Below the pieces are notes generated by a model. The model worked only from the letters and a program-made list of their open reading frames with translations. It was not told the origin of the DNA and did not search any database. A stretch of 64,000 nt of DNA from Blastocladiella emersonii ATCC 22665 (lineage: Eukaryota; Fungi; Blastocladiomycota), in assembly GCA_025594325.1 (NCBI GenBank), contig JANHCV010000005.1, forward strand, positions 1,364,001 through 1,428,000. Direction: 5' to 3'. The position numbers and the translations under genes are program-made. Each line of letters opens with the position of its first letter. Positions within the stretch are counted from its first letter, which is position 1. Shown here in pieces: positions 10,955 through 46,364 of the stretch.

Positions 10955-13324
10955 ATGGACTATTTATCAGACGACGACTTGATGCAACTTTCTCTCGACT
11001 TCATTTACGATGAAGCCCCGACGCAGGCCACCGCAATTGGCGTAGATTTTGACAACTGCGTCTCGCTCGCCGCGGTCCCGACCGAGCTGCTCGCCTTAAT
11101 CCTGCAACTCGCGAACCCGCAGTCCAAAGTGTGCGCAACCAACCGTGAGTTTCGCGCGCTCGCGAGAATGAAGGAGGTCAAACGGAACTGGGCCCGCCGT
11201 CGCCTGACCAAATGGACTGCGGAGGAGCCGACCAGTCGGCGTGTTCGCAGAGTCCCGCGCACCGAGCTCGAGGACCTTATTGGACCGGGGATCCCCTTCA
11301 AGCCGGGAAAGCCTTCGCCGAATCTCTTTCATTGCGCGTCGGAGCTGTTTCTCGACTACATGGAGCCTGACCTCGTCGTCTGCGCGGGCGACCTCGAGGA
11401 GCTCGCTAAGCTCGCCCAGTTTCCCCGCGAACTTCAATCCACTCCGCCCGCCTCGTCGTGGCAGGTTCCCGTCTTCTCGCACATCCAGCTCCTTGTCGCT
11501 GCCGTCACCCGCTCGGAATGCGCCACGGCGACCCGGCTCTTCGAGGCGACGCACACCCACGCCGACGAGCTCCTCTGGGTCCGCGCGGACTGGGTCAAGC
11601 TGCACCCGCCGCCGTCCGATCTCAACATTTACCGCAACCCGCAGGTCATGACGCTGTGTGACTACTTGCTCCAGCTTTCGATCGTGGCGTGGAATCCGGG
11701 GCTCTTCATCGCGCTTCGGAATCTTGGTCTCACGCTCGACGAGCCTGATGACATGCCCAACCTCGCGAAATTGGCGCTCACGACGCTCGCCAAGTACAGG
11801 AGCACGACGAGTCGGCTCACCATGGCGTTGGATTGGTTCTTCGAGTCCGACACGCTCTCGATCGCGGACCACTTGCTCAAATCGGGTCTCGTCGCCTCGC
11901 TTTTGGGCAGCTCGCTCGATAGCGTCCTGGAACACCTTCTCGACGAGTTCACTGACCAGGTCTCAGCCACCCTCTCCCGCAACGATCGCGCGCGCCTTGT
12001 TGCGTGGAGCCTGTCACGCAAGTCGCAGAGTCTCGAGCTTGACCTGCTCGAGTACCTCAACTACAACAATCTTCTTGACGCGCAAACGTGGGCTCTCATT
12101 GTCGTCGAGACGGTGAGCCAGAGCAGTGCCGATAGCCGTGCGATTCGCAAGCTCAGTCGTGAACTCGAGGCGCGACTCGGTGCCAACTTCCTTGACCCAA
12201 TCGTTGATGGTGCGTAACTTTTCCTGCCAAACTCGCTTTTGACGGCTTCCAGCTCATCGTCGCCTTCCTCACTTGTAGCTTTCATATTGTCTTGCGAGGT
12301 TCACGGTACCACCGCGCGCTCTCCGCGGCGCCTCCTCGCTTGCCGGCAACTTTGCGCGACTGAACGGTGGCCGGAACTGCTCGACCGGATCGCCGCAGCC
12401 ATGTTTCACGACTGCCGTCCCGAAAAGTGCCCGCGCTCCGAGCTACGCACGCGCAACGGGCGATCGTGGTCCGCGACTTCGCTCGCGGCTGGCACCAAGC
12501 AGCTGGCGCCGCACTTGGATCGTGTCAAGTTCCAGTTTGCGGCCATCTTTGGCGAGCCGACCGAGACGAACGTTTCGGTCCTGTTCGAGCTCGCTACTCG
12601 GATCCTGTCGCGGGCGGGACTCGCTCATTTTGACGATTTCGCGCCGGCCCACTGGATCGCGGTCGCGGCGCTTCAGGACTTCGACAAGCGTCCCGCGGCT
12701 CTCCAGCTCCTGCAGCAGACGGGTACCGCGTCCAAGTTCCTCGGCATGATGATCATGGCCCAGGTCGACTGCGGCGGGCGCCACATCCGCGCGTTCCTCC
12801 CGATCGACCACAACAAGTCGGACCGAACGTGTCCGAGCTGCCCGCTCGCTAAGCAGGAGCCGTAGTTCGCGACGGTCGTCGACCTCGCACGCTTCGACGG
12901 CGCCATCGCGGGCCTCCCGTCCGTCGCGCAAACGGCTCTCCTTCTCCTCGCCCACGACAGCGCCACGCTTGCCGCCGACGTGCGCCTCTCGAAACTCCCG
13001 CGCCAGCGCAGGCGGTACGAGACCGGGTGCGCGTGGCACCAGCTCCCGCAGCCGAGCCGCGAGCTCGTTCGCGCGCTGATCGGCGCTGATTTTGGAGCGG
13101 TGCTCGATATCGTCGCGAGCGAGTCGCTGCCCACGTGCGCCGACTTTTGGCGACTCGTGCCGGACGGCGCGCTTGACCGCGTGCGGGACGCGCAGTGGAT
13201 TTCGCAGAGCGTACTCAGCCTCAAGGGCCAGAAGGCCGACGAGTGCGTCAAGGAGATCGAGCGGGCCGCGTTCCGCGCGGTGCAGTCGAAGGAGTATAAG
13301 GCGGCGTTGAAGCTGTCGCAGTGA
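10955..13324 (+). pseudogene. F-box-like family copy A1; two exons (intron 12210-12278); one in-frame TAG at 12863-12865
   Basis: N-terminal LAAVPTELLALILQLA..W motif. Colinear with paralogues at 15.5, 18.2 and 23-25 kb. The TAG sits where paralogues have Trp (QEP*FAT vs QEVWFAA, QTSWFGT, QAPWFAT). Confidence 0.75.
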
Positions 13325-13579
13325 GCGCGTTTGAGTACTCGCAGCTTCATCCACACTACAATGACATCTTTAGGTTGCATTTTGCTCTCGGGTTCCGATG
13401 CTGGGTCGAGCGTCTTGAGCAGACAGCAGGAGAAGCGACGAGGCTCGAGGCCGCGAAGCGCCACTTATGCGCCACACGTGTTCGCGCCAAACTTGGGGCT
13501 CCGAGTGCGCGAGCCGCCTTCCTGTGCGCCACCGTCGGCGCCCCCTCTCTCCCTCCCCCACACATCCTCAGTGCATGCA

Positions 13580-15268
13580 ATGGAGACTTCGCTCAAGATA
13601 CCGCACTTGATCGACGCTATCTTATGTCTGGCCTGGTCGCTCGATCCAACTGACTTTGAAGCGGCGCACCAGTACGTCGGCGTGCTGCCGCGAGCGCTCA
13701 TTCCCGACACTTGTCGACAGGTGTCAAAGGTCGCTCTTGTCGACAAGCTGGCTTACCGGAGCCAGCCGTGGCCAAACCGGCCTCCGCCTCCGCCTCTCGA
13801 GTCGTCCAAGCAGCTTGCGCTCCGCAGCGACCTTGCTGTGCTTCTCCTCGCCCCAAAAGTCGAGAGCGGACAGCTTTCTTCGATCACGCTAAACTCGATT
13901 AAATTCAACGACCGGAGCGCAAGTCACCTTGGTGCTGCTCTCAACTCCCCTGCACAGTGCGTTTCGCACATTTCGCTTATTGCCTGCGGTCTCACTCTGG
14001 ATCTCGTTTGCCTACTCCGGCTTCCTGACACGGTTCTACACTTGAATCTCTCCAAGAACCCGTTGGGCGATTTCCACGATCAAGATTTATGGGACGCCAT
14101 GGGCTACGCCTTCTTTGACGAAGCGTCGGACGGTGGTACGGTCACGACTCGCGGCAGGAAGGACGCGGTCTCAGTGAACGCTGACTCTATTTCGAATCGC
14201 CTCCGGATTTTAGAAGATGGCCCTTCATCGAATGATGAGACCAACGACCCGATTGACGGTCTTTCATCAACAAACGAGACCTACGACTCGGCGGACAAGT
14301 TTGATGAGCCAATTGGCGGTTGCCTTCCGTGCGGACTGGTTAGCTTAAACCTGAGCGAGGTTTATGACCTCGCCCGAACCTTGAACGGGTTACTCGCTAT
14401 CAGCCCGCTCCCCAGCACCCTTGAATCGCTTACGCTTGCGCACAATGATCTCAACAACGAGGTCACCGTTGCAGCCATCGAGTCATTCATTCCTACCAAT
14501 CTCAAGTGCCTTAACCTCGACTATTGTCGTCTTGGCAAACTAGATTATCAGAAGAAATATTTGCAACGCGACCCATGGTTCAAGAACATTTGCGCGTCAC
14601 TCAACACTCTCAGCCTTCAATGTAACGACTTGATGAACGAGGAATGCCCTTGCGTCTGTACGCTTGAGCATCTCTACCCTACCTTGACCACGCTTATCCT
14701 TTCGAGAAACGGAAGCTGCGGCTGGGCCGAGCTTGCAGCAGTCATGCCTCCGCAGCTCGAGGTTTTCGAGCTGGTCAACCATGATGGGTGGGATTATGCG
14801 TTTCGTTCACTCCAGATGGAGGAGCAGTGCTTACAGTACCAGCTTTTGATTGATGCGCTGCCATCTACCCTCAAACGGCTTTCTCTCAGCATGCTGGTCT
14901 CCAGATACGAGAGAGCATTCACGTACTTGGTTGCGCACCTTCCGCCTCGCCTCGAAACGCTTAATATTTCGAATTGGAGCCTCAAGGCTCGAGGCCTCTG
15001 GGCACTGACGCAGCATCTGCTCCCACAGACCCTCACACACATCAACATTGGTGCCGCAAGGCCTGCCAAGTTTGTTGAAGTTCTTGTTCGCCGGCTTACT
15101 TCCACGCAACTTAGTTACGAGGACGCAAAGTACCCGCTCGACTGGACTGGACCGATCGACGAAACAGGCCTTGAATGGATCTTTGGCCTTGATGCAGCTG
15201 ATGACCCCGATGATATCCGCCAAGGCGAGCGCCATGGGCGTGAGTATTGGGAGCTGCGCGACTTATGA
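13580..15268 (+). CDS. Leucine-rich repeat (RNI-like) protein B1, intronless, 562 aa
   Basis: Repeated LP.(T/S)L..L.L..N.L units. Paralogue of 25612-27234 (both start M.TSLKIPHLID.ILC). Confidence 0.8.
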   Translation: METSLKIPHLIDAILCLAWSLDPTDFEAAHQYVGVLPRALIPDTCRQVSKVALVDKLAYRSQPWPNRPPPPPLESSKQLALRSDLAVLLLAPKVESGQLSSITLNSIKFNDRSASHLGAALNSPAQCVSHISLIACGLTLDLVCLLRLPDTVLHLNLSKNPLGDFHDQDLWDAMGYAFFDEASDGGTVTTRGRKDAVSVNADSISNRLRILEDGPSSNDETNDPIDGLSSTNETYDSADKFDEPIGGCLPCGLVSLNLSEVYDLARTLNGLLAISPLPSTLESLTLAHNDLNNEVTVAAIESFIPTNLKCLNLDYCRLGKLDYQKKYLQRDPWFKNICASLNTLSLQCNDLMNEECPCVCTLEHLYPTLTTLILSRNGSCGWAELAAVMPPQLEVFELVNHDGWDYAFRSLQMEEQCLQYQLLIDALPSTLKRLSLSMLVSRYERAFTYLVAHLPPRLETLNISNWSLKARGLWALTQHLLPQTLTHINIGAARPAKFVEVLVRRLTSTQLSYEDAKYPLDWTGPIDETGLEWIFGLDAADDPDDIRQGERHGREYWELRDL

Positions 15269-15378
15269 CCGTCATCGTCGCTTGTTTTGCTTGTTTCGCA
15301 ATAATTAAAGTTGATTTGTTTGCTGGCTTTGGCTCGTCATCGCACTTGGCGTCCGCTGAACACCAAGCGGATTGCGAG

Positions 15379-15398
15379 ACGCGTCGATCAAACACGTG
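15379..15398 (+). promoter_or_regulatory. ACGCGT-N8-CACGTG element upstream of A2
   Basis: Exact motif, lying in a ~70-bp block shared with 18028-18100. Confidence 0.65.
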
Positions 15399-15477
15399 AG
15401 GCGATGTGAGGGCAGCTGTGGCGCACCGAACTCGCTTTGCTTGCCGCTCGATCGGTTGCTTCCCAAGTCCCACTACC

Positions 15478-17684
15478 ATGAAGCAAGGAAAAACGGAAAC
15501 GCATGAATACTTGATGCAACGTGCTGCTGGCATGAAGTTCCGCAGTTGCAACTCGTTGACCGCCCTCCCAACCGCGATACTCGCCTTTGTTACGCGGCTT
15601 GCAAACATCCGGCTGATTCACCTCACGACAACTCGCGAGCTCTACTTCATCGCAGCGATGAAAGGGACGCGGAACGTTTTGGCGCGCCGCCGTCTCCTCA
15701 CTTGGGTGTCTGACGGCATCAACAAGCTCATCCGCCAGTGGCCTCGCGCAATCATTGCATTTGACCTCGACGTGCTCAGTTCCTCACAATGGTCGCTGCA
15801 GGTCGGCGACCCGCCGGCCGCTTTTTACCACTGCGCCTTGGACCTCTTACTTGATCTGGTCGAGCCCAAACTCGCCGCCTTGGCCAACGACCCAAAGAAG
15901 TTTGAGAAGCTTGCGGAACTTGCCAAGTTTCCTCAAGCTGATTCAGCCATGCGCGGTTGCTCCCTCAATGCCAACCAGCGCTCACGCTCAAGCTCGTAAC
16001 CATCTCCGTGTTTTCAACAGGTTGCTGCTGGACGGCAGGCTTGTCCGCCCGCTGGCTCTATCCATCATTCTCTCCGCGACTTTCTGCTCACGCTTTCCGT
16101 CATCTCGTGGAACGCGGGCGTCCTGGCCTTGGTTTGCGCTTCGGACTACGTGCTTGATGACACAACAGCGGACCTGAAGACTCTTGCACCCTTGGTTACG
16201 AAGGCGCTGTCGTACTACGCGAGCGACGAGGACCGGATTCTTTGCATGCTGGACTTGTACTTTTTACCAATCAGTTTGCCCATCGCCAAAGTCGTTTTCA
16301 AATCCGGTCTTGTGCAGCAGCTCATGGATCAATCGTTGGACCGCGTTCTCGAACATCTCGTCAACCAGTATGCCGAAACCTCATTGAATTGGTAACTCCC
16401 GCAGTTCAATCAAAACTCGTCACTTGGAGCTTCCAGTGCCCCTCTGATAAACACCACAGCAATCTTATCGAGGTTCTCCACAGCAAGGGCCTCCTTGACG
16501 CTGAAACGTGGGCGCTGATAATCCAGGCAGCTGTTGAATCCGGCTCAAGCAAGCATCTCTTCCTGGGCCGCCTTGGACGGGAGGTGAAGGCGCGCCTTCC
16601 GCCGCCGGACCTTATTGACGTCGCTGTAAATGGTACGTCTTTCGACATCCAGCTTTGATCTTTCTTGACCACACTCCTGTGACTCTCTTTTGCCTAGCTT
16701 TTTCGAGGCTCGAATCAGAATCGGCATGCGGTATTCTTCACCTTGTGCCTCTCTTCGAAGCCGATCGGCTGCCCAAGCTCTATGAGCGACTCGCGTCGAA
16801 ATTGATGGACGAAACCGCTCACGAACAGCACGCAGATTTCGTCCTTGGCTGTCAGGCGCGGCCATTGGACATATGGTCGTCCCTTGGTGGTGTCCCAGCG
16901 CGTCTCTCCACAATGTTTGGAGAGCCGTCGGATAAAAACGTTGGGTTTCAGCTTGAATTTCTCGCCCGAATCGCGCCATTGGCCAACGCGTCCCAGTTTA
17001 GCCCGCTTGTATCAACGCATTGGATCATTGTTGCAGCTCTTCGAGGCACTGAAACGCGCGCCGCAGCGTTGGACCTGGTGCAGCGATCGGGCACGGCGTC
17101 CAAGTTTCTCGCCATCATGATTTCAGCTCAAATCCGCGCCGACAGTCACAGTACCCGAGCTTCCTTCCCTGTTCACGACACTGCACCGCCTGCGTGCGAC
17201 GAGTGCCCCTTGTCAAAGCAGGAGGTGTGGTTTGCAGCGTTTTTCGACCTTGTGCGCATCGACGGTGCGCTTGATCAACTCCCGGCCTCCATCAAATCAA
17301 AGCTGCGATCGTTTGCCCACGACTCTCTCAGCAAGTCCGCGGGGCGTGCGGCTCTCCAGCGCGTCGCTATCGTCTTCACCAACTTCGTGTGGCTGCCGCA
17401 AAGTCTCGCACTCGGGCCGCGAGATGATACGCATCTTTGCTCGCACTAATCTCGCTTCCCTCCTTGACATGGTTGAGACTTCCGTCCCGTCTGGATGCGT
17501 CCATTTCTGGCGTCAGATCGAAGACGGCGCGCTTGACTGCCTGCGAGATGTCAACTGGATTGCCCGCTTAGTCAAGGCGCTTCAGCGGCAGGGGGTTGCG
17601 CGTAGCGTAGACGAGGTCAAGCGTATCGCTCCCATCACCGTGGGGTCAAACGAGTTCGTGGCAGCCCTCAAAACAGCTGAATAA
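15478..17684 (+). pseudogene. F-box-like family copy A2 with several frameshifts (intron 16633-16697)
   Basis: Homology to intact A3 is spread over successive frames (ORFs 15406, 16129, 16242, 16655, 17232). Confidence 0.8.
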
Positions 17685-18045
17685 ATAAACTCTTTGCACA
17701 GTCGAGTACCTCAGACGTCAAGAGCCCTGCCGTGAGTTTGAGTGAGCGGGGCGCAACGGACTCCACTGCAATACACGCAGGGAGCGGGCCAATCGTGGGG
17801 GCCCCGACTGGCAACGTACAATACGCGATGGCTCCAAGGTCGTGGTCACTGACTTGAGAGGCAGCCATGGTGCTGACCAAACGTCAAGACGTACCAGCTC
17901 TAGCAAGGGTAGGGGAAGCAAAGCTGGCCTTTGCGTCGTGTCCGAGAAAATTCAGCAACACTTGAGTAGTAAAAAAATTAACAACTTTGCTCATATCCAT
18001 TCGTCAGCGCGCTCGGCATCCGCTGATCACCAAACGGTTTGCGAG

Positions 18046-18157: not shown

Positions 18158-20640
18158 ATGGAGCAAGGAAACAGGGAATCACATGAAAACTTGATGCAAC
18201 TCGCTGCCGGCATGGAGTTCCGCAGCCGAGACTCGCTGGCCGTCCTCCCGGCCGAAATCCTCGCTTTAGTCATGCAGCTCGCAAACTTTCGCGCCACTCT
18301 GTACTCGGCCTCTCGCGAGCTTTACTCCGTCGCACACATGAAAGAAACGCGGCACGTTTTGGTGCGCCGTCGACTCTTGACTTCGATGTCCGACGGTCTC
18401 AACGGGCGCCTTTCCTGGCGGCCTCACCCAAACATCGCATTCGATCTCGACGTGCTCATTTGCTCGGATGCCTGGCTGAACGTTGGTGACCCACCGGCTG
18501 CTTTTTACAACTGTGCCCTGGAGCTGTACCTTGATTTGGTCGAGCCCCAGCTTGCCACCTTGGCTAGCGACCCGAACAAGCTCGACAAGCTTGCCCACAT
18601 GGCTCGTTTTCCTCTTCAAGCCTACGCTGAAATCGAGCAAACACATTTTCATGGCGTTCCCGTCGTGGTGCACGCGCTGCACCGTGCTTCGGCACCCCCG
18701 CCGCCAAAGTCTAATTTCAACCCTCATGTCCTTCCCACCTACGAGCTGATTCTCTGCAATGGGTCGGTGTTGCACCACAGGTTCGGTCGCCCGCTCCTGC
18801 TTTCTTGGAAATATCCAGTTTACTCGCTCATCAAGCTTCTCACCGCGGCGATTCCTCGTCTGGACGAGCACGCGACATTCACACTCTTTGGCTTGGCGCG
18901 CAAACGTGTCCCGGACTTGTTCAAGGTTCGCGGCGTTTGGAACCAGCTCCACCCTCTGCCTTCTGCGATTGGTACTCTCCCGCTTGACGAACATCAAACG
19001 CTGTGCGACTACTTGCTCAATCTTTCTGTGGTCGCTTGGAACTTGGGTTTCATCACTTTGATCCACTCCTCAAACTACCCACTTGGCGACGCCATCAAAG
19101 GCCCTGATTTCTTCCTTTTGTCGGCCTTGTGGAGGGCTCTCTCGTGCTTTGCAGACGACAAAGGTCGAATCTTCCGCGTTGTGGACTGGTATTTCCTTCA
19201 TTACGGAGATTCCATCGCCAATGGTTTGCTCAGATCTGGACTTGTCCATCATCTCGCGGTCCGATCTTTGGACCGCGTCCTGGAACACATTCTTGAAAAC
19301 TACACCGAGCAGCTTGTCGCTTCAATGAGCCCTGTAGATCAAGCAAAGCTCGCTGTTTGGCGCTGCCGGTTCGTGTGTGAGGTCGGCCAGATCGACTTCA
19401 TTGAGCTTCTCGACTACAACGGCCTCCTCAATCTCGAAATGTGGGCATTCATATTTCATGCAGCCCTCACCGACAGCTTGAGCAAACGACTCTTCCTGGG
19501 TCGCCTTGGACAGGAGGTGGCCGCGCGCCTCTTGCCAGCGGAGCGAATGGTCATTGTTATGAATGGTACGCTCTCCACTCCCTCGCTGTGCTCAGTCGCA
19601 CTCTCTCACCACTTCCGCGACTCTGTCCTTGCCCAGTCATCTCAAGGCTGGATTTAGCCTCTGCGCGCTCCATCTTCGATCTCGTTCCCCTTTTCACGGC
19701 GGATGAGCTACCCGAATTCCTCAACATGCTTGCCTCAAAAGTGCTCGACGATTGCTCGCGCGCCCAGTTGCTCGAGCTAAACTCACAGCTCGCACCAGGC
19801 GCGTTGAACTTGCCGTTGCCACGCATGGGTGGTGGTATCTCAGCACTTCTTGCAGCTTTGTTTGAGCATCCTTCTGAGGCCCACCTTGGCCTCAAGTTTA
19901 CCTTTCTGAATCAAATTGTCTCCTGCGTTGATGAGGCCCACCTTGTCTCGCTCAACACGGCACACTGGCTTATTGTTGCAGCGCTCCAAGAGCCCGAGGC
20001 GCGCACCGAAGTTTGGGACCTCATGCAGCGTTCCGTTACCGCGCCCAAGCTTCTTGCGATCTTGATTTCGTTTCAAACTAGCTTGCTTGGTGAAAGCAGC
20101 GGTCAATCCATACTTCCGGTACTCGAGTCGACCTCAAGGCTGTGCGGCAAGTGCCCGTTGCCGCAGCAGACCTCGTGGTTTGGGACGTTTGCCGACCTTG
20201 CGCGCATGGAAAATGTCCTCGATCAGCTTCCATCGTTTGCCAAAGCTTGCTTGCACTCCCTTGCCCACAACGCCACGAGCGCCGTTTCGGACGAACCCTC
20301 ACACATGCGTCCGCCGCGGAGTACCGCGCGCTCGTGCAGTTGCCCGTGGATTCCACATCCCTGCCACGAATTAATTCGTGTCCTCGCTCGGATCAATCTC
20401 AGCTCGCACTTGGACATTGTCGCAGCCGACTTCCCTCCCACATCACTCAACTTTTGGCGGCAGCTCGAGAACGGTGCGCTCGACGGCGTGCGGGATATCG
20501 GCTGGATTGCTCGCACGTTCAAGGTGCTTCATCGGCAGGGCGCTGTTCAATGCGTAGCGCAGATTAAACGTGTCTCTCCGATGACAGTGTGGTCGGACCA
20601 GTTCGCGGCTGCAGTCCAAGCGGCCGCATGTGCCTACTAG
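18158..20640 (+). CDS. F-box-like family copy A3, apparently intact (exons 18158-19565, 19658-20640; 796 aa)
   Basis: LAVLPAEILALVMQLA motif. Phase-1 GT-AG intron 19566-19657 joins two open frames. C-terminal CGKCPL.QQ.SWF and DGALD..RD..WI motifs. Confidence 0.75.
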
Positions 20641-36189: not shown

Positions 36190-36212
36190 GTGTGCAAAGC
36201 ACACACCCCTAG
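36190..36212 (+). mobile_element. Helitron-type 3' terminus (hairpin + CTAG followed by T)
   Basis: GTGTGC-AAA-GCACAC stem-loop at 36190-36204, CTAG at 36209-36212 and T at 36213, about 140 bp after the PIF1 stop. Confidence 0.6.
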
Positions 36213-36420
36213 TCGATGTTTCCTGCTATTAAGCTTCCTTGAGCACCAAAAATATATCAGGTTTTCAAGCGAGAGATGAGCATTGTTAGCGACTTTCGCA
36301 AAGCACCGATTGAAAATCCCGCGTGCAACGCTGGCATCGAATAGCGTTGTGTCAGATCCCGACTCGCCCTTGGCAGCAAGTTCCGAAAGCGAAACATCCG
36401 TATCTTTGGTGTTGCAGCAG
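36213..36420 (-). pseudogene. Decayed partial duplicate of the 36882-37583 gene
   Basis: VSLSELAAKGESGSDTTLFDASVA vs VSPSDIAAKGESGSDTTLVNAGVA; 20-nt exact match GATCCCGACTCGCCCTTGGC. Confidence 0.7.
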
Positions 36421-36881
36421 AGGGTCAAGCCTGACTACACATCGTTTGGCCTTGTTAAGGAAGCCCATTTGCTTCCGCCCCCAGCAGCAGTCTGTCGCCT
36501 CAGCAGCTTCTCAAGCCCGGTGCTCCCACTGCCGCCGCAGCCGCGAAGCAGCCGCAGCAGCAGCAGGCCCAGCCCTCACGCAATACGGCGGCGGCCGTGA
36601 TCACTGTCGACGTGAGACCCGCGAACGGAGACGCGTTGCGCCACAGCGTGACCATGGCGGACGCTGATTGGCTGCCGCGGTTCCAGTCGGTCAGTTCGCG
36701 TTTCGCGTGGGGTCCTCGACCAAGTCGGTTATGTCCCCTCGCAAACGAGGCCCCGAACCTCGTCAAGTTCAGCGTGTTGAACGAGACGTAATCGCATTGT
36801 TCACAAGACATCGAAGGTGGAGGATTCAAGAAGTTTATCCTGTTTTTAGAGTTTTCTGTTTTCATGGGTATCACAAAAATT

Positions 36882-37583: not shown

Positions 37584-37812
37584 GGTGTCGATGTCTTGAC
37601 TACGTTGCAAAAATGACAAGTCAGAAACGCTTTTCATGGCATTGAAGTAGTAGTTGCATACGTGTTGAGGTCTTGCTTATCGGTGAGGTAGCGGAGAGAG
37701 GGTGGCGGGGCGGCCCACGGCTTTTGTAGGCTCCAGAGTGCATACCAAAAGGCCTGCAGAGCGAGACCTCATGCATACACCCAACTCACCTGAGCTCATG
37801 ATCGACGCCACG

Positions 37813-37832
37813 ACGCGTAATTTTATCACGTG
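37813..37832 (+). promoter_or_regulatory. ACGCGT-N8-CACGTG element in the divergent region upstream of Argonaute
   Basis: Exact motif ACGCGT-AATTTTAT-CACGTG. Confidence 0.6.
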
Positions 37833-38272
37833 AGGTGCGAGACACTCCGTGAGACGCGTTTCAAGTCTTTGGATGAACGCCGCCGCACTCCCTCTCTCCC
37901 TGCATTCACCACTCATGACTTGATGCAAACTGACTTTGACATGTCAAGATCCCCTCGTGCAACTTCCCGAGTTGGTCCGCCGGCGTTCCTCAAACCGCGT
38001 TGACGACGCGCGATCCCCGATCCACGACCTCCAACAGCGAGCCGAATGGAAAGTCTCGCGGGACACGTTGCCGCGTCGGAAATCATGGGAACGCGCTGCG
38101 GATGCTGGGGGACAGGCCTTGTCCACGTCCTGTCCATCTTGCCTATCCAGGTCGGAGCAGTTTGCGAAAGGTCGCGTCGGGCGCGGCGACTATAGAAGAA
38201 GCCCCCGCCCCCGCCCCCGCGCGCGCTTCGGACACGAGTCTCCATAACGTTCACCTCGCGCACACCATCACC

Positions 38273-41184
38273 ATGTCCGCTACGCGCTTCACGCTCGGGC
38301 CCGCCCCCTTCACGACGCGCACGTTCGTGGGCCGTCCCGCCGTCGGCAAGGTCGGCACGCCCGTCCGCGTCGTCGCCAACCACTACGCGCTCTCGCTGCT
38401 CAACAACATCACCGTGCACCACTACGACGTGGTCATCTCGCCCGAGCCGACCAAGTCGCTCGCGCGCAAGGTGTGGGCCGAGTGGGAGCGCGCGCACGGC
38501 GCCAAGCTCGGCGTCATGGCCGCCTACGACGGCGTCAAGAACCTGTTCGCGCCCAAGCCGCTGCCCCAGGACCACATGCAGTTCGACGTTGTGCTGCCCG
38601 CCACGACCGAGGGCAAGCGCGCCAAGGAGTTCAAGATGACCGTCAAGCTCGCCTCGACCATCAACCGTACGCTCTCTCGCTCCCTGCGCTCGTCCTCGCC
38701 GATCCGCTACTGACTCTCTTTGCGCGTGTAGTGAGCGAGCTGACCTCGTTCCTCGACAAGCGCACCTCGCTGTCCAACAACGTCCTGACCTCGATCATGG
38801 CGCTCGACGTCGTGTTCCGCCAGTCGCCCCTCAAGCGCATGCTGGTACGCTATCTTCGCGTTTCTCCGTGTCAGAAACCGACTCTGACACCGCCCATTCT
38901 CTAGCCTGCCGGCCGCTCGTTCTTCGACCCGACGTCGCGCCCGGTCGACCTCGGCGGCGGCCTCAACCTGCTGTCGGGCCTGTTCATGTCGGTGCGCCCG
39001 GGCGTCGGCACCATGACGCTCAACACCGACACGGCGTACACGGCCTTCTACAAGCCGCTGCCCATGGTCGAGTTTGCGCGCGAGGTGCTCGGCCGCGCCA
39101 TGCCGCCCGCCACCCAGGAGCTCATGCCGCGCGACCTGATCCGCCTCGAGAAGATGGTCCGCCTGCTCGTCGTCGCGGTCAAGCACCGCGGCGCCCTCAA
39201 CCCGCGGTTCCGCGTGCTCAAGCTCACGCGCACGTCGGCCGCCAAGACCAAGTTCACGCTGTCGCCGCCGGGTCCGCCCGCCGAGGGTGCCGCGGCGGCG
39301 CCTCCCGCTGGTGCTACGAGCTCGCCGGCCAAGGGCGGCAAGAAGGGCGCCGCCGGCAAGGGTGCCGCGGGTGCTGCTCCCGCTGGTACCGGTGGCGTCA
39401 GCGGGGCTACGGCGGCGCTCGCGCGCCTAACGGTCGGCGGCAAGCCGCGCGAGGTCACGGTCGCCGAGTACTTCGCCGCGGCCTACAACCTCAAGCTGCA
39501 GTACCCGAACCTGCCGTGCCTCGTCGTTGGCACGCCGCAGCGGCAGACGTACCTGCCCATGGAGGTGGCCGTCATCGACGCCGGCCAAAAGTACCGCGGC
39601 AAGCTGTCCGAGGACCAGACGTCCAACGTCATCAAGATCGCGGCCAAGAAGCCGCTCGAGCGCATGGCGCAGCTTAAGCAGCTCATCTCGACCACGGCCA
39701 ACCTCGCGTCGGACCCGTACCTGCAGGCGTTCGGCGTCAAGGTCGCGCCCGAGCTCATGTCGGTGCAAGGCCGGTTCCTGTCGACGCCCAAGCTGCAGAT
39801 CGGCGGCAACAAGATGACGGTGCCGCGCGACGGGTCGTGGAATTTCGCCAACGCGCGCGTCGCAGCGGGCGCGCGTATCTCGTCCATCGGCGTGCTTAGC
39901 TTCGCCGACCCGCGGTACCTGCCCGAGGAGCGCGTCGAGGAGAAGATGGACGCGCTGTTCAACATGTGCGAGAAAATGGGCCTCGTCTTCAACCCGAACA
40001 AGAAGACGAAGACGACATACCCGATCCGATCGGCGCGCACGGGCCGCGGCGGGTTTGGGCCCGAGGCCATCAAGACGGCGCTGTTCGAGATTTACAACGA
40101 GACCGAGGCCACGTTCGGGCAGCGGCCCGACATCATCGTCGTGATTCTGCCGCGCAAGGAGACGGCGCTGTACGCAGAGATCAAGCGCGTCGGCGACATT
40201 GAGCTCGGTGTCCCGACGCAGTGCCTCGTCCAGGCCAAGATCGAGCGCGCCAACGAGCAGTATTGGGCCAACGTCGTCCTCAAGGTCAACGTCAAGGTGC
40301 TCGGTGCCGGCGCCGCGGTCCCGGCCACGACCAACTTTTCGCTCGCCCAGTCCAAGTACATTGGCGCAGGCGAGTCGGTCATGCTCGTCGGCGCCGACGT
40401 GTCGCACCCGTCGCCCGGCGCCGGCCACGCGTCGATCGCGTCCATGGTCGCCACCATGGACCCCAAGTGCGCGGGCCGATACTCGGCCGAGGTGCGCGCG
40501 CAGCCGTCGCGCCAGGAGGAGATTGCGGACGTGCGTGGCATGTTCGCGGCGCTGCTGCGCCGGTACTACCTCGCCAACAAGAACACGTTCCCCAAGAAGA
40601 TTATCGTGTACCGCGACGGCGTGTCCGAGGGCCAGTTCGACATTGTGCTCAAGGGCGAGCTCGAGGGCATCCGGTCCGTGCTCAAGAAGGCGGGCGCGTA
40701 CGAGCAGACGCGCATCACGTTTATCACGGTCCAGAAACGCCACCACACGCGCTTCTTCGCGACCAACCCGGGCGACAACGACCGCTCGGGCAACCTCAAG
40801 GCCGGCCTCGTCGTCGACACGGGCGTCACGCACCCGACCGACTTCGACTTTTTCCTGCAGTCGCAGGCCGGCCTGCAGGGGACCAGCCGCCCGACGCGAT
40901 ACGCGGTGCTGCACGACGAGAACAACTGGACCGCCGACGACCTGCAGCTCTTCACCTACCACCTCTGCTACACATACGCGCGGTGCACGCGCAGTGTGAG
41001 CGTCGCGCCGCCCGCCTACTACGCCCACCTCGTCGCCTTCCGGTCGCGCCACCACCTGCTCTCGTCCGAGTCCATGTCCGACACGGCGTCCGTGTCCACG
41101 GCGCGCTCGGGCGACAAGGACGCGCCCGTCCCCGAGCTCGCCAAGGTGCACGCGAACCTTGCCGCGTCCATGTACTACATGTGA
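38273..41184 (+). CDS. AGO: Eukaryotic Argonaute (N, L1, PAZ, L2, MID, PIWI), 928 aa; exons 38273-38666, 38732-38844, 38905-41184
   Basis: Motifs VANHY, YDG.KNLF, YLPMEV..I..GQ, YAEIKR..D..LGVPTQC, LKVNVK, GADVSHP, QEEI, YRDGVSEGQF, VQKRHHTR, QGTSRP, CYTYARCTRSVS..PPAYYAHL. Catalytic D-E-D-H residues present. Confidence 0.97.
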
Positions 41185-41447
41185 TTGTCCGCTTGCCCTT
41201 TTGCTCGCTGGTGTTGGTGATTGGAATGAAATCTTTCGTGACGTTGAATCGGGTTACCTCCTCCAGTTTGATCTCGCCCGTTAGTTCAGCGCGACTTCCT
41301 TAGACGAGCTTTCGAATGAAATGCGGCAGAAAGTCTTCTACAAGGTTCGTGGTGGCGTTGACGGCTCACTCACATGGCCGTTCCCTGTGCGGTGATCAAC
41401 CGCTTCAAACGAGGGTCGGGACACGCGGCGGCTATGCGCATACGACC

Positions 41448-41829: not shown

Positions 41830-44078
41830 TCACACGGAGGGCGCCGCGCCACCAGACAACAAAAGTTGGACGTTAACCAGGCTCGCTGCGTCAGGAGCGG
41901 CGGTCTTGAACATGCGGGCGAGCCACTTGGTCCTAGCCACCGTGCCAGAGTCCACGTAAAGCTTACTGAACAGAGCAGCGAGGACCTCGGGATCAGCTCG
42001 GCCATCAAGCACGCCGTCGGGAAAGAGGTGCAGAACGGAGAGCGGGACAGTGCCCGCGTATACCTCGGCCTGGAACGCATCAAACGCCGCCTGCGGGCCA
42101 GCGTCAAAGAGCGCACGTGCCGCGAGGCAAGCAGACGCGAACGAGATGCACGACTTCGCGGTGCACCGAGTGTCAAAGCAGCGGCACAGTTGTGTCCAGA
42201 CGTTGGTGAAGAGAAGGACGAGCGACGCACGGTGCTCGGGCTCGCAGCAGTTGAGTAGCTCTTTATGAATCGTGCGCCACAGCTGCTTTGCCGTGACAGA
42301 ACTGCTCCGAGGCATCGTGAGGGCGGGGTCGGAGACATAGTTGAAGCGATCGTGGACACACGGGACGCCGTCGGGATGGAACATCACCCGGATCGTCGCA
42401 AAGAGGTAAAAGTGCGCAGTTCCCGTCTCTTTCAAAACGCACAATAAGCGGTAGGTCGCATCGGGCTTCAGAAAGGCCGAGGCAAGAAGCTGCGCGATGG
42501 CCGCGGAAGTAGACCATATTTGGTGAGTGTCGTTGGGCTGCGAGACGAGAAATTCCAGGAGCTCGGCGGGAATCCCGTTGAGGAAAGAGAGTATGTTGGG
42601 AGCTGGGAGCTCTGGATTGAGATGAGTCCAGTGTTTGCGATCCGCTTCGACAAAGTCGGCAAGGCTCAGTCGGCAGTCAGTACCGCAGTGCGGGTTTGGC
42701 ACGAGAGCGAATTTGAAAAGCGCTTGGCAAACATCGTTGCGAGCTCGCTCCTGAGCGTATGCGCCCTGGCCAACGCAGAACGCTACCATTTGTTTGCAGC
42801 CAAGTCAACTCGTACATTCACGATGAAGCAGGATCTCGGAGTTGCGTACCATGCAGTATCATGTCATTCCATTTCTCGGAGGTATGCCGGCTGCAAAGTC
42901 GCTGGACGAAACCGTACTCTTTGCGGGCGATGGCAGCACCAAGAATTCCGCTCCAGCGCTTGGGAGCAATGAGCCCATGGCTGTCAAGAAGCTCGAGGTC
43001 TCCAACAGAAAGGCCGCGGTCCATCCAGCCGATAAAGCGTGAACCGAGTTGACCTTCATCATCCAGAGGGTCACTTGAGTCGAACCAGCGCAGGAGGCCA
43101 AAGTCTCCGAGCTGGAAGAAATAGGTCAAAGCGGTGACCACTTGGTCGGGGAACTGAACAAGCAGCGGCAAGAAGACCCGAGCAGTGCTCGAGAACCCAG
43201 CTCGCTATGTCCTTGAAATATTCCGCGGTCCCGATTGTGCGCAAAAATTCGGCGGCCATGTAGCACGCGTAGTACGCTGGACTATCCTCGGAAAGCAGCG
43301 CAGCGAGGGCCGATGTGCCCACGGTGTACCGTGGAGTATCGACAATTAGCCGGAAAATTCGAGCCTCGCGCGTGAGGATGGAGATGTACGCCAACGCGTC
43401 GATGAAGCGCAAAGAAGTCGCGGGCATATCGAGCTTGTCGGGTCCAAAGTCGGCACCAAAGTAGTCCTTGAAGATCGTGAGCCACTCCATGAGCCCAAGC
43501 GACACGTCCAGGAGCCGCGGCAAGTTGGCAGCAACATCGTCAAGGAACTGGCGCATGGGATCCGTCCATCCAAACGAGGCAGCCGAAGCAATCAGTCGGA
43601 TCAGCGTCGAGAGCGGACACATCATGATGGAGGAGTGCGCTCCAGAGACCGCGGCCTCTAACTGCTTGCGTGTAGTCGCTGAGTCAATGTGGCTCGCCCG
43701 AATACGGCGGCGCAAGAGTTTGGCCACGTGAACGAGAAATTCCGTCGGCGCATGGGCGTGATAGTAAAGCCCCTCGCTCCGTCGGGTAAGAGCGCCGACC
43801 TCGACGGGATTGAAATCGACCATGCAGAGGCGCGTGACGGCGTCGCGGTGCTGGAGCTTAACTCGAAGCGCAACCTTGCTCAGCTGCTCGACAATGGAGA
43901 CGGCCCAAGCGCATTGAACTTGCTCGTCGATCGCCGGGACGCGGAGGCACGCGGAAGCGGTCGCAGTGGCCGAGCGCGGTTTGGCGAGCTGGAGCACAGC
44001 GGCAATCAGGTCCTCTGGGAGCAGGGCCAGGGTGGACATGCCCAAGGCAGGTTCATTCGTTTGCATCAAGTCTGACAT
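41830..44078 (-). pseudogene. F-box-like family copy C3 with one frameshift near 43170 (intron 42783-42849)
   Basis: LALLPEDLIAAVLQLA motif; colinear with C1; C-terminal LFPDGVLD. Confidence 0.75.
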
Positions 44079-44183: not shown

Positions 44184-44585
44184 TCACATGATATCCCAAC
44201 GCGTCTCAAGTCCCAACCCCTTGACGCGTCTCGGCTCGCAAACTCGCGGCGGAGAGCGCTGATAAGCTTTGTGTTCGGAAGGAATGGCTTGCCGGACGCT
44301 GGTAGGGTTTGTGTCGACCATTGCAAGTCGATTCACGGCATCATCGCCGAATTTAAACGCTTTGCCGAGAACGACGTGGGTACAAAGCTGGTCGACTACG
44401 GTGATTGTCCACGGGTAGTAGACGGTCCTATGAATGGCCAGGGTGCGAAGTGATGCTGAGGAGGCTGCGATGGCGGCACGCGGCTCGGCAAGCTGAAGCA
44501 CAACGCTCACGAGTTCCGCGGGAAGCTGACTCAGGGCACCGGTGCCCGAGTCCAGTTCATTCGATTGCATGGAGTTTCGATTCAT
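44184..44585 (-). pseudogene. F-box-like family copy C4, N-terminal fragment only
   Basis: MNRNSMQ..LSQLPAELVSVVLQLA; homology ends after about 100 codons, running into the C3 promoter. Confidence 0.7.
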
Positions 44586-44848
44586 GGCAAGGCGTAATCG
44601 CACGTCGAAGGGAGTGGAGAAGGGTGCCGAGCGTGATCAGCTCCCAGAGAAGCTCCCGTGGCTTGAGACTCGACGGCGTGGCTGCTAGATCAACGCCCCA
44701 CGTGAGATGGCCTGATTTCTCGACGCGTCTCAACGACCACGAACCGCCGCGTGTTTATGAAATTCAAAACAACACCGAGCAAAAACGGTTCACCTCACAA
44801 AGTGTCAAACCTTGTTGTGGAATGCTTGGGTTGGATGCGTGATGTCCT

Positions 44849-45157
44849 TCAGTTGAAGCGCTTGTCGGGCACCAGCTTCTTGGTCAGCGGGCGTTCGTAG
44901 ACGTAGCGTTCGTCATCTTTCCCGTCCTTGGTTTTCGGGGTACCAAACTTTGACTTGTCGCCGAACCGATCGGCATCATACGTGCGGCGGTCAATTGGGG
45001 TTGAAAGGACCTTGTAGGCGTAGTTGATTGCGGCCATTTTCTCCAACGAGCGCTTGTCCGTTTTGCCCTCGTAGTTCTCCTTCAGGGCACGGTAGGCGTC
45101 CTTGACCTGCTTGACGGGAGCTTCGCGAGAAATGCCGAGGAGCGAGTAGTGATCCAC
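44849..45157 (-). CDS. J-domain-like protein lacking HPD, copy 1 (GTG at the homologous start)
   Basis: DHYSLLGISREA..KQVKDAYRAL..YEGK...INYAYKVLS....RRTYD. TATAAAAA starts 96 nt upstream. No in-frame ATG precedes the domain. Confidence 0.65.
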   Translation of the reverse strand: MDHYSLLGISREAPVKQVKDAYRALKENYEGKTDKRSLEKMAAINYAYKVLSTPIDRRTYDADRFGDKSKFGTPKTKDGKDDERYVYERPLTKKLVPDKRFN

Positions 45158-46052
45158 TTTCGGGTCTTGGGATGTCGCTGACTTAGCAGTTGAGATTTGG
45201 CGAATGTGCTTGATGAGATTCAAGTCACGGTGCCAGGGAAGTTCGTTTTTATAGATGGCTCAAGTCCACGGCATTCGCCCGTGCTTGTGACATTGCCAGG
45301 ACAAACGCAAGACAGTTGGTCCATGATGCGCGGTAGTCGACACAAAAGTTCGTTGACAAAACGTGGTAGATTTTTGATCACACGACCTAGATCAACTTTG
45401 CCAAGGTTAGCGACCGCGGACGCCGCTGACACAATGAGTGCGTCAGTGAGCGCTGCCCAGTGTTCAGGTGAGAGACGACGTACTACGGATTCGCACAATC
45501 CGTCGTTGGCTAGCTTCTCGGAACGTCTGCGCTTCCTGTATCATATTCCATGCTCAAAGTTGCGATTCGTGCGTAGAAATCGTGGAGGACGTTGATGGGA
45601 CGCGTGGTTGCCTGCGCTGCATCAGTAGTCGCATCAGTAGTCGCATCAGCCTGACTCATCTCGCGCGAGAATCTGTGTCGCTTGCCGTTATGAATCGTGA
45701 GCCCCGCATTCTCCCTAAGATAAGAGCCAATAAAACCTTGTCTTACTCCGACTCAGTTGAGTAATCAGTGTTGTTGCAGCTCAAGCGAGCTCGCCAGTCG
45801 ACGATTCGGACGGTATGTAAACGCACGCATTGTTCAAATAATTGGAACGACTTTCACTCTCACAAGTTGTTGGACCAACGGTTTTCAAGCGTTTCAGCTT
45901 GGCCGAACGCGAAGGGGGAATGGTCGCACGCAATGAGAAGTCGGCACTTTTAAAACTATAAACGTATTATACATGTGCGCAGCAGGACCAGCAATGATTG
46001 ACAAGAATTCGTGGCGCCCGTTCGCCGTTGCTGATGCCACATGCTTGACGCC

Positions 46053-46364
46053 TTAGGCGAAGCGCTTGTCGCGCTTGAGGCCGCCGTCCGCCAGCGCCAC
46101 TGGATGAACGTATCGCTTATCCTTCGGTCCATTCTTAGTCATCGGAATGCCGTACTTGGTGGTATCGCCGAACCGCTCCGCATCGTACTTGCGCCGCTCA
46201 ATCGGCTCCGAGAGGACCTTGTAGGCGTACTTGATGGCCACGAACTTCTCCTGCGAGCGCTTGTCCTTCTTGCCGTCGTACTGATCTTTAAGGTTGCGGA
46301 ACGCGTCCTTGACGTCCTTGACCGAGGCGTCGCGAGAGATGCTGAGGAGGGTGTAGTGATCCAT
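46053..46364 (-). CDS. J-domain-like protein lacking HPD, copy 2 (103 aa)
   Basis: MDHYTLLSISRDAS.KDVKDAFRNL..YDGK...KF.AI.YAYKVLS.P.ERR.YD. TATAAAT starts 96 nt upstream. Confidence 0.8.
   Translation of the reverse strand: MDHYTLLSISRDASVKDVKDAFRNLKDQYDGKKDKRSQEKFVAIKYAYKVLSEPIERRKYDAERFGDTTKYGIPMTKNGPKDKRYVHPVALADGGLKRDKRFA

What the first reader, a model, noticed from the sequence alone, without database searches (positions are those of the whole stretch)
10955..46364. 36-kb birth-and-death island of F-box-like and LRR genes surrounding a slicer Argonaute: candidate ubiquitin/RNAi defence locus
Seen: eight paralogues share an N-terminal L..(L/V/F)P.E(L/I)...(V/I)(L/M)QLA motif and, in the six copies that retain that region, a phase-1 intron at the same position. 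Only A3 looks intact. They are interleaved with two LRR genes, two J-like genes, transposons, a tRNA and Argonaute. Established: rapidly turning-over F-box arrays mark host-parasite conflict in nematodes and plants, and F-box proteins (polerovirus P0, plant FBW2) can target Argonautes. Inference: an SCF-adaptor repertoire under conflict, physically and possibly transcriptionally tied to RNAi.
Basis: partly seen in the sequence, partly recalled or inferred. Interest (0 to 1): 0.75.

Follow-up and report, generated by a model that had tools for sequence, protein, structure and literature searches.

The report
F-box-like gene array beside Argonaute
This stretch of the water fungus Blastocladiella emersonii holds one mostly decayed cluster of a huge, undescribed gene family that probably supplies adaptors for the cell's protein-tagging (ubiquitin) machinery. 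Its position next to an RNA-silencing (Argonaute) gene looks like an accident of location, not a functional link.

Summary
The window (Blastocladiella emersonii ATCC 22665, contig C17) holds eight paralogues in two subfamilies of four. Six keep the LPxE(L/I)xxxVLQLA N-terminus, and six share a phase-1 intron at the same codon. Only one copy (18158-20640) is intact. Two LRR genes, two HPD-less J-like genes, a multicopy TIR element, a tRNA-Thr and a slicer-type Argonaute lie between them.

The N-terminus is F-box-like at profile level, though below Pfam's threshold. hhalign against the genome's own certified F-box-like domains gives 93.6% probability and score 35.7 (shuffles 8.2±1.8). The family profile also hits plant F-box domains. 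The body is an all-helical repeat with no known relative.

This is not a special island. The family has at least 150 N-termini genome-wide (527 candidates) in many tandem arrays. Outside this species, only weak hits in B. britannica and Catenaria match the helical body.

The RNAi link is not supported. Only two of four Argonaute genes adjoin family members, and those two descend from one segmental duplication. Argonaute has core-like codon usage (GC3 0.93-0.96, against 0.62-0.70 for most copies).

The scan already reported this family on other contigs (s1-076306, s1-256207). No paper found in the searchable library describes it. Skp1 binding is untested.

The parts
10955..13324 (+). Paralogue I-1. 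Exon 1 10955-12209 (F-box-like motif at 11078-11110), phase-1 intron 12210-12278, exon 2 12279-13324. One in-frame TAG at 12863, so probably a pseudogene.
13331..15268 (+). LRR gene 1 (Met near 13580), a paralogue of LRR2. No F-box at its N-terminus.
   Evidence: Pfam FNIP 19.4 bits, sub-threshold. 44-61% identity to LRR2. hhalign against F-box: 1%.
15320..17723 (+). Paralogue I-2, a pseudogene with frameshifts, stops and an internal deletion. The phase-1 intron 16633-16697 is retained.
18158..20640 (+). Exon 1 18158-19565, phase-1 intron 19566-19657, exon 2 19658-20640.
22258..22329 (-). tRNA-Thr (CGT). The surrounding 21787-22545 is also present (79% nt identity) at the paralogous locus C17:1578352-1579106.
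23028..25328 (+). Paralogue I-4. 5'-truncated, two stops in the exon-1 remnant, donor at 23815, a long intron, and an open exon 2 at 24243-25328.
25456..27234 (+). LRR gene 2 (Met near 25612).
   Evidence: Pfam LRR_6 27.7 bits, LRR_1 22.6, FNIP 21.1. The family has 86 matches and 445 candidates genome-wide.
27402..29759 (+). Paralogue II-1, a pseudogene with a frameshift near 27836 and stops. Phase-1 intron 28692-28770. An orthologous copy with an open exon-1 frame lies beside the second Argonaute copy.
29897..34080 (+). Paralogue II-2, a remnant with an internal deletion, split by the interspersed repeat at about 30540-33859.
34670..36213 (+). Helicase-bearing relic (PIF1/UvrD-like C-terminal piece). 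Coordinates are taken from note s1-273227.
   Evidence: Pfam UvrD_C_2 E 8.7e-5, below cut-off. Not followed further.
36620..41290 (+). High-GC3 block duplicated at C17:1583054-1587705 (95.3% nt identity). It holds an unknown gene (36882-37637, minus strand) and the Argonaute gene (coding within 38000-41184, plus strand).
41833..44078 (-). Paralogue II-3. Exon 1 from 44078, with a ~59-nt frameshifting deletion near 43180. Phase-1 intron 42849-42783, exon 2 to 41833. Convergent with Argonaute.
44187..44603 (-). Paralogue II-4, an N-terminal fragment (139 aa) that carries the motif.
44849..46364 (-). Two small J-like genes (44849-45223 and 46053-46364) with YEG/YDG in place of HPD.

Best explanation
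The eight paralogues belong to a very large gene family, with at least 150 and possibly about 500 copies. Outside Blastocladiella emersonii, only weak hits in other Blastocladiomycota match the helical body.

Each full-length gene has two exons and encodes about 650-800 aa. The protein has a divergent F-box-like N-terminus followed by an all-alpha, repeat-like body that matches no known family.

The most likely function is an interchangeable substrate receptor of SCF (Skp1-Cul1-F-box) ubiquitin ligases. In that model the N-terminus docks on Skp1 and the fast-evolving helical body selects targets. This step is inferred, not shown.

The family grows by tandem duplication inside lower-GC, repeat-rich stretches and loses copies by pseudogenisation. 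This window holds one old cluster in which seven of eight copies are broken.

The Argonaute gene is a core-type gene that happens to lie in this family-rich part of contig C17. Its adjacency to family members goes back to a single ancestral arrangement that was later copied by a segmental duplication. It is not evidence of a functional or transcriptional tie to RNAi.
For: Shown:
1. The paralogue map, the shared phase-1 intron and the decay states.
2. Family size. The N-terminal profile gives 527 first-look candidates. Of these, 150 were scored, all at E <= 5e-10, on 12 of 21 contigs and mostly in tandem groups with open frames.
3. F-box homology.
   - hhalign of 41 family N-termini against 22 Pfam-certified F-box-like domains of the same genome: probability 93.6%, E 2e-7, score 35.7 over 42 columns.
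   - 100 column shuffles of the F-box alignment: mean 8.2, sd 1.8, max 14.7.
   - In the 1.84-billion-protein profile search, the only listed hits whose source was looked up and lies outside Blastocladiomycota are Leersia F-box/PP2 proteins. They are matched at residues 228-278, overlapping their Pfam F-box-like domain at 242-285.
   - PF12937 is the only recurrent Pfam hit among members: 5 of 41, best E 0.02.
4. Body. The AF2 model has pLDDT 82 and pTM 0.78 and is all-helical. The best structural matches are HEAT/TOG/ARM/ANK repeats at Z <= 7.5.
5. Restriction. Only 42 representatives reach E <= 1e-3. The 21 looked up are B. emersonii (13), B. britannica (2), Catenaria (4) and the two plant F-box proteins.
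6. Coding constraint. dN/dS is 0.24-0.55 in the closest pairs.
7. SCF partner. Three Skp1-domain loci are present.
8. Argonaute.
   - There are four Piwi genes.
   - The C17 pair shares a 4.7-kb block at 95.3% nt identity. The paralogous flanks hold a tRNA region at 79% nt, an LRR2 remnant and a II-1 orthologue at 49-57% aa.
   - No scored family hit lies within 40 kb of the C11 or C20 Argonaute genes.
   - GC3 is 0.93-0.96 for AGO and 0.89-0.97 for the CPR-like and Pol epsilon core genes, against 0.62-0.70 for most family copies.
Against: - No member reaches Pfam's F-box or F-box-like gathering score.
- The family profile finds no F-box protein among PDB sequences.
- The N-terminus folded alone comes out as two long helices (pTM 0.42) with no F-box match, so the fold-level test is inconclusive.
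- Skp1 binding and ubiquitin-ligase activity are untested.
- Genome-wide counts are lower bounds from a capped scan, and intact versus broken copies were not counted genome-wide.
- Cross-species synteny of Argonaute could not be examined.
- An ancestral II-type gene has stayed next to Argonaute through the segmental duplication, which a functional link would also predict.
Confidence: 0.6

Rival explanations
1. The array is an SCF-adaptor repertoire functionally tied to RNAi. One or more of the adjacent F-box-like proteins targets or regulates Argonaute (as polerovirus P0 or plant FBW2 do), or the array and Argonaute are co-transcribed or co-regulated as a defence locus.
For: - Family members flank Argonaute on both sides. 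II-3 is convergent, with about 650 bp between the 3' ends.
- The paralogous Argonaute locus also keeps a II-1-type gene about 2.6 kb upstream, with an open exon-1 frame.
- The N-terminus is F-box-like.
Against: - The two adjacent cases are one evolutionary event, a segmental duplication.
- The C11 and C20 Argonaute genes have no scored family hit within 40 kb.
- The local density of family genes is at least one per ~34 kb over 1.26 Mb, so adjacency is unremarkable.
- All four copies nearest to Argonaute in this window are broken.
- The duplicated block ends about 100 bp after the Argonaute stop codon and does not include II-3 or II-4.
- Codon usage separates Argonaute from the array.
Confidence: 0.05
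2. The N-terminal motif descends from or resembles an F-box but no longer binds Skp1. The family then does something other than ubiquitin-ligase targeting, for example acting as helical scaffolds or recognition proteins with a conserved N-terminal docking helix for another partner.
For: - All members fall below Pfam thresholds.
- The conserved QLA-PR core and the replacement of the usual Trp in the third helix differ from this genome's canonical F-boxes.
- The isolated N-terminus did not model as an F-box.
Against: - The profile-profile match covers essentially the whole F-box-like domain, template positions 3-46 of 61, and scores far above the shuffles.
- There are cross-hits to certified plant F-box domains.
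- In the full-length model the segment forms short helices at 43-52, 57-62, 64-70 and 73-89 with pLDDT 84-90, compatible with an F-box.
- Skp1 genes exist in the genome.
Confidence: 0.25
3. The paralogues are cargo of, or are themselves, a mobile or selfish element. Copy number and decay would then reflect transposition, not host gene-family evolution.
For: - The arrays sit in lower-GC, repeat-containing stretches that hold a TIR element and a helicase relic.
- Many copies are broken.
Against: - Copies are highly diverged, at 17-67% aa identity, unlike the true repeat, which is 82-99% identical at the nucleotide level.
- They are arranged in tandem, keep a conserved spliceosomal intron, carry no transposase, integrase or reverse-transcriptase domain, and show dN/dS below 1.
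Confidence: 0.05

Closest known systems
Lineage-specific expanded F-box families in tandem birth-and-death arrays (nematode F-box/FTH and F-box/FBA2 genes; plant F-box families)
   Same: - A short N-terminal F-box-type motif followed by a lineage-specific, fast-evolving body.
- Hundreds of copies in tandem clusters, with many pseudogenes.
- Restricted taxonomic range.
   Different: - The N-terminus is too divergent for Pfam's F-box models.
- The body is an all-helical repeat with no known family.
- The host is an early-diverging zoosporic fungus.
- Positive selection and a conflict role are not shown here: gene-wide dN/dS is 0.24-0.55.
Canonical fungal F-box-like proteins (Pfam PF12937 / PF00646), about 47 loci in this same genome
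   Same: An LPxE(L/I) start, hydrophobic spacing and overall domain length. hhalign gives 93.6% probability.
   Different: - A conserved VLQLAxPR core.
- The conserved Trp lies about 38 residues after LP, and there is no xKxW motif.
- No family member is found by the Pfam models at E <= 0.01.
- Canonical genes are dispersed, largely on contigs with no scored family hit such as C1, C2 and C7-C9.
FBXO47-type F-box plus ARM-like helical repeat proteins (PF24467)
   Same: The architecture: an F-box followed by an alpha-solenoid. It appeared as a low-scoring lead in the protein atlas, score 0.77.
   Different: There is no sequence-level or fold-level match above noise. This is a lead only.
F-box proteins that target Argonaute (polerovirus P0, Arabidopsis FBW2)
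   Same: Only the presence of an F-box-type motif and, here, physical proximity to an Argonaute gene.
   Different: No sequence relationship was tested or seen. Proximity is explained by local gene density and one duplication event. This comparison rests on established knowledge, not on a tool result.

Membership tests
F-box / F-box-like domain (Pfam PF00646, PF12937) | The sequence matches the family HMM at or above the gathering score. | tested here: not met
   - No hit at E <= 0.1 on any window ORF.
- 5 of 41 N-termini hit PF12937, best E 0.02.
- Genome scans with PF12937 and PF00646 find 47 and 27 loci, none of them a family member.
F-box / F-box-like domain (Pfam PF00646, PF12937) | Homology detectable by profile-profile comparison with certified members. 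| tested here: met
   - hhalign A1 against A2: probability 93.6%, E 2e-7, score 35.7, 42 columns.
- Shuffled control: mean 8.2, sd 1.8, max 14.7; reversed alignment 11.0.
- The family profile hits Leersia F-box/PP2 proteins on their F-box.
F-box / F-box-like domain (Pfam PF00646, PF12937) | Three-helix F-box fold. | tested here: inconclusive
   - In the full exon-1 model, helices 43-52, 57-62, 64-70 and 73-89 have block pLDDT 84-90.
- The isolated 74-aa model is two long helices with pTM 0.42.
- Its best structural match is Z 4.6, and none is an F-box.
F-box / F-box-like domain (Pfam PF00646, PF12937) | Binds Skp1 and assembles into an SCF ligase. | not testable with these tools
   No multimer prediction or experiment is available here. 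Skp1-domain genes exist at three loci.
Birth-and-death multigene family | Tandem paralogue arrays with intact and decayed copies, and differential loss between paralogous loci. | tested here: met
   - Seven of eight window copies are broken.
- The II-1 orthologue has an open exon-1 frame at the paralogous locus but is broken here.
- Arrays occur on 12 contigs.
Argonaute-linked defence locus (F-box adaptors acting on AGO) | A consistent, independent association of family members with Argonaute genes. | tested here: not met
   - There are four Piwi genes.
- Only the C17 pair is adjacent to family genes, and that pair comes from one duplication.
- No scored family hit lies within 40 kb of the C11 or C20 copies. 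These lists are lower bounds.
Slicer-competent eukaryotic Argonaute | N, L1, PAZ, L2, MID and PIWI domains, and the DEDH catalytic tetrad. | tested here: met
   - Pfam: Piwi 5e-91, PAZ 2e-17, L2, Mid and L1; ArgoN 2e-19.
- Alignment to human AGO2 (4z4h), E 1.5e-131, keeps GADVSHP, RQEEI, YRDGVSEGQF and PAYYAHLVAFR.
F-box-LRR (FBXL-type) proteins, considered for the two LRR genes | An F-box N-terminal to the LRRs. | tested here: not met
   The conserved LRR-family N-terminus (A4) scores 1.0% probability against canonical F-boxes and 0.4% against the family N-terminus.

The most novel reading that the evidence does not exclude
The F-box-like helical family is a diversified ubiquitin-based recognition or defence repertoire of a zoosporic fungus, for example against viruses, transposons or parasites. 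Under this reading, the II-type gene retained next to Argonaute through a segmental duplication regulates Argonaute turnover, giving a host-encoded counterpart of P0/FBW2-type control of RNAi.
Probability: 0.06. Interest if true: 0.8.

Novelty: new member of a known kind. Interest (0 to 1): 0.4.

Why it matters
If the proteins are SCF adaptors, B. emersonii devotes roughly 1.5-5% of its ~10,000 genes (gene count from PMC9730499) to a family that standard domain annotation misses. The genome paper does not mention it.

That would add an early-diverging fungus to the few lineages, nematodes and plants among them, with massive fast-turnover F-box repertoires. It would also supply a new helical substrate-recognition module.

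For genome annotation, it shows that hundreds of 'hypothetical proteins' in this model organism form one family with a recognisable N-terminal signature.

The specific, more exciting idea of a ubiquitin-RNAi defence locus is not supported.

Tried and rejected
1. LRR genes as FBXL-type proteins. Their conserved N-terminus (MKTxxxIPHLIDAIL...) looked F-box-like by eye, but hhalign gives 1% and 0.4%. Rejected.
2. RIP-like mutation as the cause of the low GC. CpG o/e is 1.08-1.34 and TpA o/e is 0.37-0.66 throughout, with no island-specific signature. Rejected.
3. The family as transposon cargo. Rejected on divergence, tandem order, the conserved intron and the absence of mobility domains.
4. PDB sequence search with the N-terminal profile. 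Only two chance-level hits.
5. Foldseek and VIA searches with the exon-1 model. Only generic helical-repeat matches, E >= 0.037 and Z <= 7.5.
6. N-terminus folded alone. The model was uninformative.
7. Protein atlas. Only weak leads.
8. Word-based protein search with an intronless full-length paralogue. One hit, which named the organism.
9. Cross-species synteny of Argonaute.
10. Direct inspection of the C11 and C20 Argonaute neighbourhoods.
11. Spliced gene models were never joined. Exons were searched apart by reference, and intronless paralogues (L019:53-2395:-, L020:971-3361:+) stood in for full-length proteins. The joined step is left out.

The contig is fungal, not human.
Full report
**Organism and setting**

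The window is G000:C17:1364001-1428000 of a 32.65-Mb, 21-contig assembly. A paralogue used as a query returned a protein named 'hypothetical protein H9P43_004008 [Blastocladiella emersonii ATCC 22665]' on a contig of exactly the length of C16. Later look-ups gave the same organism for 13 of the 21 family hits whose source was looked up. The genome paper reports 21 contigs and 10,031 genes and mentions neither this family nor Argonaute (PMC9730499). The contig is fungal, not human.

The flanks are about 68-72% GC and carry ordinary core genes:
- a cytochrome-P450-reductase-like gene,
- a citrate-lyase-beta-like gene,
- an ING protein,
- a protein kinase,
- DNA polymerase epsilon.

The stretch from about 10 to 47 kb drops to 54-62% GC.

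**Checking the observation**

A motif scan of the six-frame translation finds the N-terminal signature six times. tblastn of the window's ORFs against the window resolves eight paralogues in two subfamilies of four.

Full-length genes have two exons. In six copies, exon 1 ends with (D/N/E/H/G)-G followed by GT(G/A)(C/T)G, so the donor splits a codon after its first base. In the five copies where an acceptor could be placed, the junction codon is G|CN (Ala). The introns are 65-92 nt: 12210-12278, 16633-16697, 19566-19657, 28692-28770 and 42849-42783. For I-4 only the donor (23815) was placed.

Only I-3 (18158-20640) is open throughout. The states of the others are:
- I-1 has one TAG at 12863 where paralogues have Trp.
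- I-2 is frameshifted and has an internal deletion.
- I-4 lacks its 5' part and has two stops.
- II-1 is frameshifted.
- II-2 has an internal deletion and is split by a repeat.
- II-3 has a ~59-nt frameshifting deletion relative to its nearest genomic paralogue.
- II-4 is a 139-aa fragment.

The interleaved features are also real:
- LRR gene 2 passes Pfam LRR_6, LRR_1 and FNIP. Its paralogue LRR1 is sub-threshold.
- The two small minus-strand ORFs are DnaJ-like, with YEG/YDG in place of HPD.
- ARAGORN finds tRNA-Thr(CGT).
- The first 600 nt of the element at 30540 occur at least 17 times in the genome at 82-99% identity.
- A weak UvrD_C_2 match marks the helicase relic.
- The Argonaute has all six domains, and its DEDH motifs align with human AGO2.

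**What the paralogues are**

No window ORF and no full-length paralogue hits any Pfam family at E <= 0.1, or at E <= 0.01 for the proteins scanned.

Searching the whole genome with exon 1 of I-1 and of II-3 gave 110 and 98 matches on many contigs. Most have open frames, and many sit in tandem groups. I fetched 40 of these loci. Nearly all carry the same N-terminus, with consensus LxxLPxELxxxVLQLAxPRxxVxAASxxL...W. A profile of 41 N-termini gives 527 first-look candidates in the genome. The 150 that were scored all have E <= 5e-10. None of them lies on contigs C1, C2, C7-C10 or C12-C14.

This 36-kb 'island' is therefore one of many arrays of a family that may account for 1.5-5% of the gene complement.

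**Is the N-terminus an F-box?**

At the level of Pfam HMMs, no.
- PF12937 is the only recurrent hit, but weak: 5 of 41 members, best E 0.02.
- Genome scans with PF12937 and PF00646 find 47 and 27 canonical loci, none of them family members.
- A profile search of PDB sequences found nothing.

At profile-profile level, yes.
- I aligned 22 canonical F-box-like domains of this same genome.
- hhalign of the family N-termini against them gives probability 93.6%, E 2e-7 and score 35.7 over 42 columns. That spans essentially the whole domain.
- A hundred column shuffles of the F-box alignment score 8.2 ± 1.8 (max 14.7), and the reversed alignment scores 11.0.

An independent result points the same way. 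In a profile search of 1.84 billion representatives, the only listed hits whose source was looked up and lies outside Blastocladiomycota are Leersia perrieri F-box/PP2 proteins. They are matched at residues 228-278 by profile positions 12-59, overlapping their Pfam F-box-like domain at 242-285.

Structure is inconclusive.
- In the AF2 model of I-1 exon 1 (35 sequences, pLDDT 82, pTM 0.78), the segment forms short helices at 43-52, 57-62, 64-70 and 73-89 with block pLDDT 84-90. This is compatible with an F-box.
- The 74-aa fragment folded alone gives two long helices (pTM 0.42) and no F-box match.
- Skp1 binding cannot be tested with these tools. Three Skp1-domain loci exist in the genome.

**The body of the protein**

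The rest of exon 1 is all-helical. The best structural neighbours are HEAT, TOG, ARM and ANK repeats at Foldseek E >= 0.037 and VIA Z <= 7.5, which is within the noise for helical proteins. The protein atlas gave only weak leads: F-box clusters at 0.79 and an F-box plus ARM_FBXO47 cluster at 0.77.

Two intronless paralogues (L019:53-2395:-, 781 aa; L020:971-3361:+, 797 aa) cover both exon regions. They served as full-length queries by reference.

**Range and selection**

The big profile search finds only 42 representatives at E <= 1e-3. The strong ones that were looked up are all B. emersonii. Weak ones come from B. britannica (E 8.7e-7 and 6.9e-4) and Catenaria anguillulae (E 4e-5 to 4e-4). 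On this evidence the family is restricted to Blastocladiomycota and greatly expanded in B. emersonii.

Nei-Gojobori dN/dS for the twelve closest exon-1 pairs is 0.24-0.55, at dS 0.55-2.1. The copies are protein-coding and fast-evolving, but gene-wide positive selection is not seen. Site-level tests were not possible.

**The Argonaute link**

The genome has four Piwi genes. One of them (C17:1586553) gives the same score as the window's.

blastn shows that window 36620-41290 is duplicated at C17:1583054-1587705 with 95.3% identity. This block holds an unknown minus-strand gene plus Argonaute. The tRNA-Thr region (21787-22545) recurs 4 kb upstream of that copy at 79% identity. Between these two pieces, the second locus holds the following:
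- an LRR2 C-terminal remnant,
- a II-1 orthologue at 49-57% aa identity with an open exon-1 frame.

The two loci therefore descend from one ancestral arrangement: tRNA - LRR - II-type gene - unknown gene - Argonaute. In the window this arrangement has been expanded by I-4, II-2, a repeat and a helicase relic. The Argonaute block has either been homogenised or duplicated again more recently. The duplicated block ends about 100 bp after the Argonaute stop codon and excludes II-3, II-4 and the J-like genes.

The other two Argonaute genes (C11, C20) have no scored family hit within 40 kb.

Within C17:0.65-1.91 Mb there are at least 37 scored family N-termini, about one per 34 kb as a lower bound. 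Any gene there has a substantial chance of a family neighbour.

Codon usage separates Argonaute from the array:

| Genes | GC3 |
|---|---|
| Argonaute | 0.93-0.96 |
| Co-duplicated neighbour gene | 0.88 |
| Pol epsilon | 0.97 |
| CPR-like gene | 0.89 |
| Family copies (most) | 0.62-0.70 |
| I-1 | 0.77-0.85 |
| LRR genes | 0.62-0.65 |

There is no RIP-like dinucleotide signature.

**Side test on the LRR genes**

The LRR family is itself expanded: 86 matches, 445 candidates, and a pure LRR tandem array at C19:508-518 kb. Its conserved N-terminus looked F-box-like by eye but is not by hhalign, at 1% and 0.4%. The pairing of F-box-like and LRR genes recurs at C17:1249-1252 kb, but it is not obligatory.

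**Verdict**

The reading as an F-box-like, birth-and-death family is supported at the level of sequence profiles, with Skp1 binding untested. The reading as a ubiquitin/RNAi defence locus is not supported.

The scan has already reported this family on two other contigs (s1-076306, s1-256207), and my independent tests agree with those reports. Searches of the paper library found no description of the family.

I rate it a new member of a known kind, namely expanded lineage-specific F-box-type adaptor families. Interest is moderate for the family as a whole and low for the Argonaute-specific claim.

Noticed in passing
window 36620-41290 and G000:C17:1583054-1587705: Argonaute and its upstream unknown gene form a 4.7-kb block that is 95.3% identical at the nucleotide level between two loci 182 kb apart (AGO C-terminal part 99.7% aa). 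The paralogous flanks are only 79% nt or 49-57% aa identical. This suggests gene conversion or a second, recent duplication of the Argonaute block alone.
   Followed up: partly
G000 genome-wide: None of the 150 scored family N-termini lies on contigs C1, C2, C7-C10 or C12-C14, whereas many canonical F-box genes sit on C1, C2 and C7-C9. The genome may have family-rich, low-GC3 compartments and family-free core contigs.
   Followed up: partly
window-wide, e.g. 38986-41184 against 18152-20640: There is a sharp GC3 split. Argonaute, Pol epsilon, the CPR-like gene and the gene at 36882-37637 have GC3 0.88-0.97. Most family copies and the LRR genes have 0.62-0.70. No RIP-like dinucleotide bias is seen. 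The cause (expression level, recombination/gBGC, or gene age) is unexplained.
   Followed up: partly
G000:C19:507500-519000 (L075, L076): A tandem array of five or six LRR paralogues of the window's LRR genes, without F-box-like family genes among them. The LRR family gives 445 first-look candidates genome-wide.
   Followed up: partly
window 23815-24243: The intron of I-4 is several times longer than in the other copies. It contains a direct duplication of a ~100-nt unit; the string TGTATGATCCGGAAACGTGAGCT occurs twice.
   Followed up: no
window 44849-45223 and 46053-46364 (minus strand): Two small stand-alone J-like proteins match Pfam DnaJ but have YEG/YDG where the HPD motif should be. They probably cannot stimulate Hsp70 ATPase.
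   Followed up: partly
window 39264-39440 (Argonaute residues ~93-152 of the 732-aa exon): An Ala/Gly/Lys-rich stretch of about 55 aa inside PAZ has no counterpart in human AGO2; it falls in the alignment gap between the two HMMER domains.
   Followed up: no
window 30540-31140: The 5' end of the inserted element is a young interspersed repeat. One copy on C4 is 99% identical over 597 nt, and more than 15 others are 82-97% identical. The element family has probably been active recently.
   Followed up: partly
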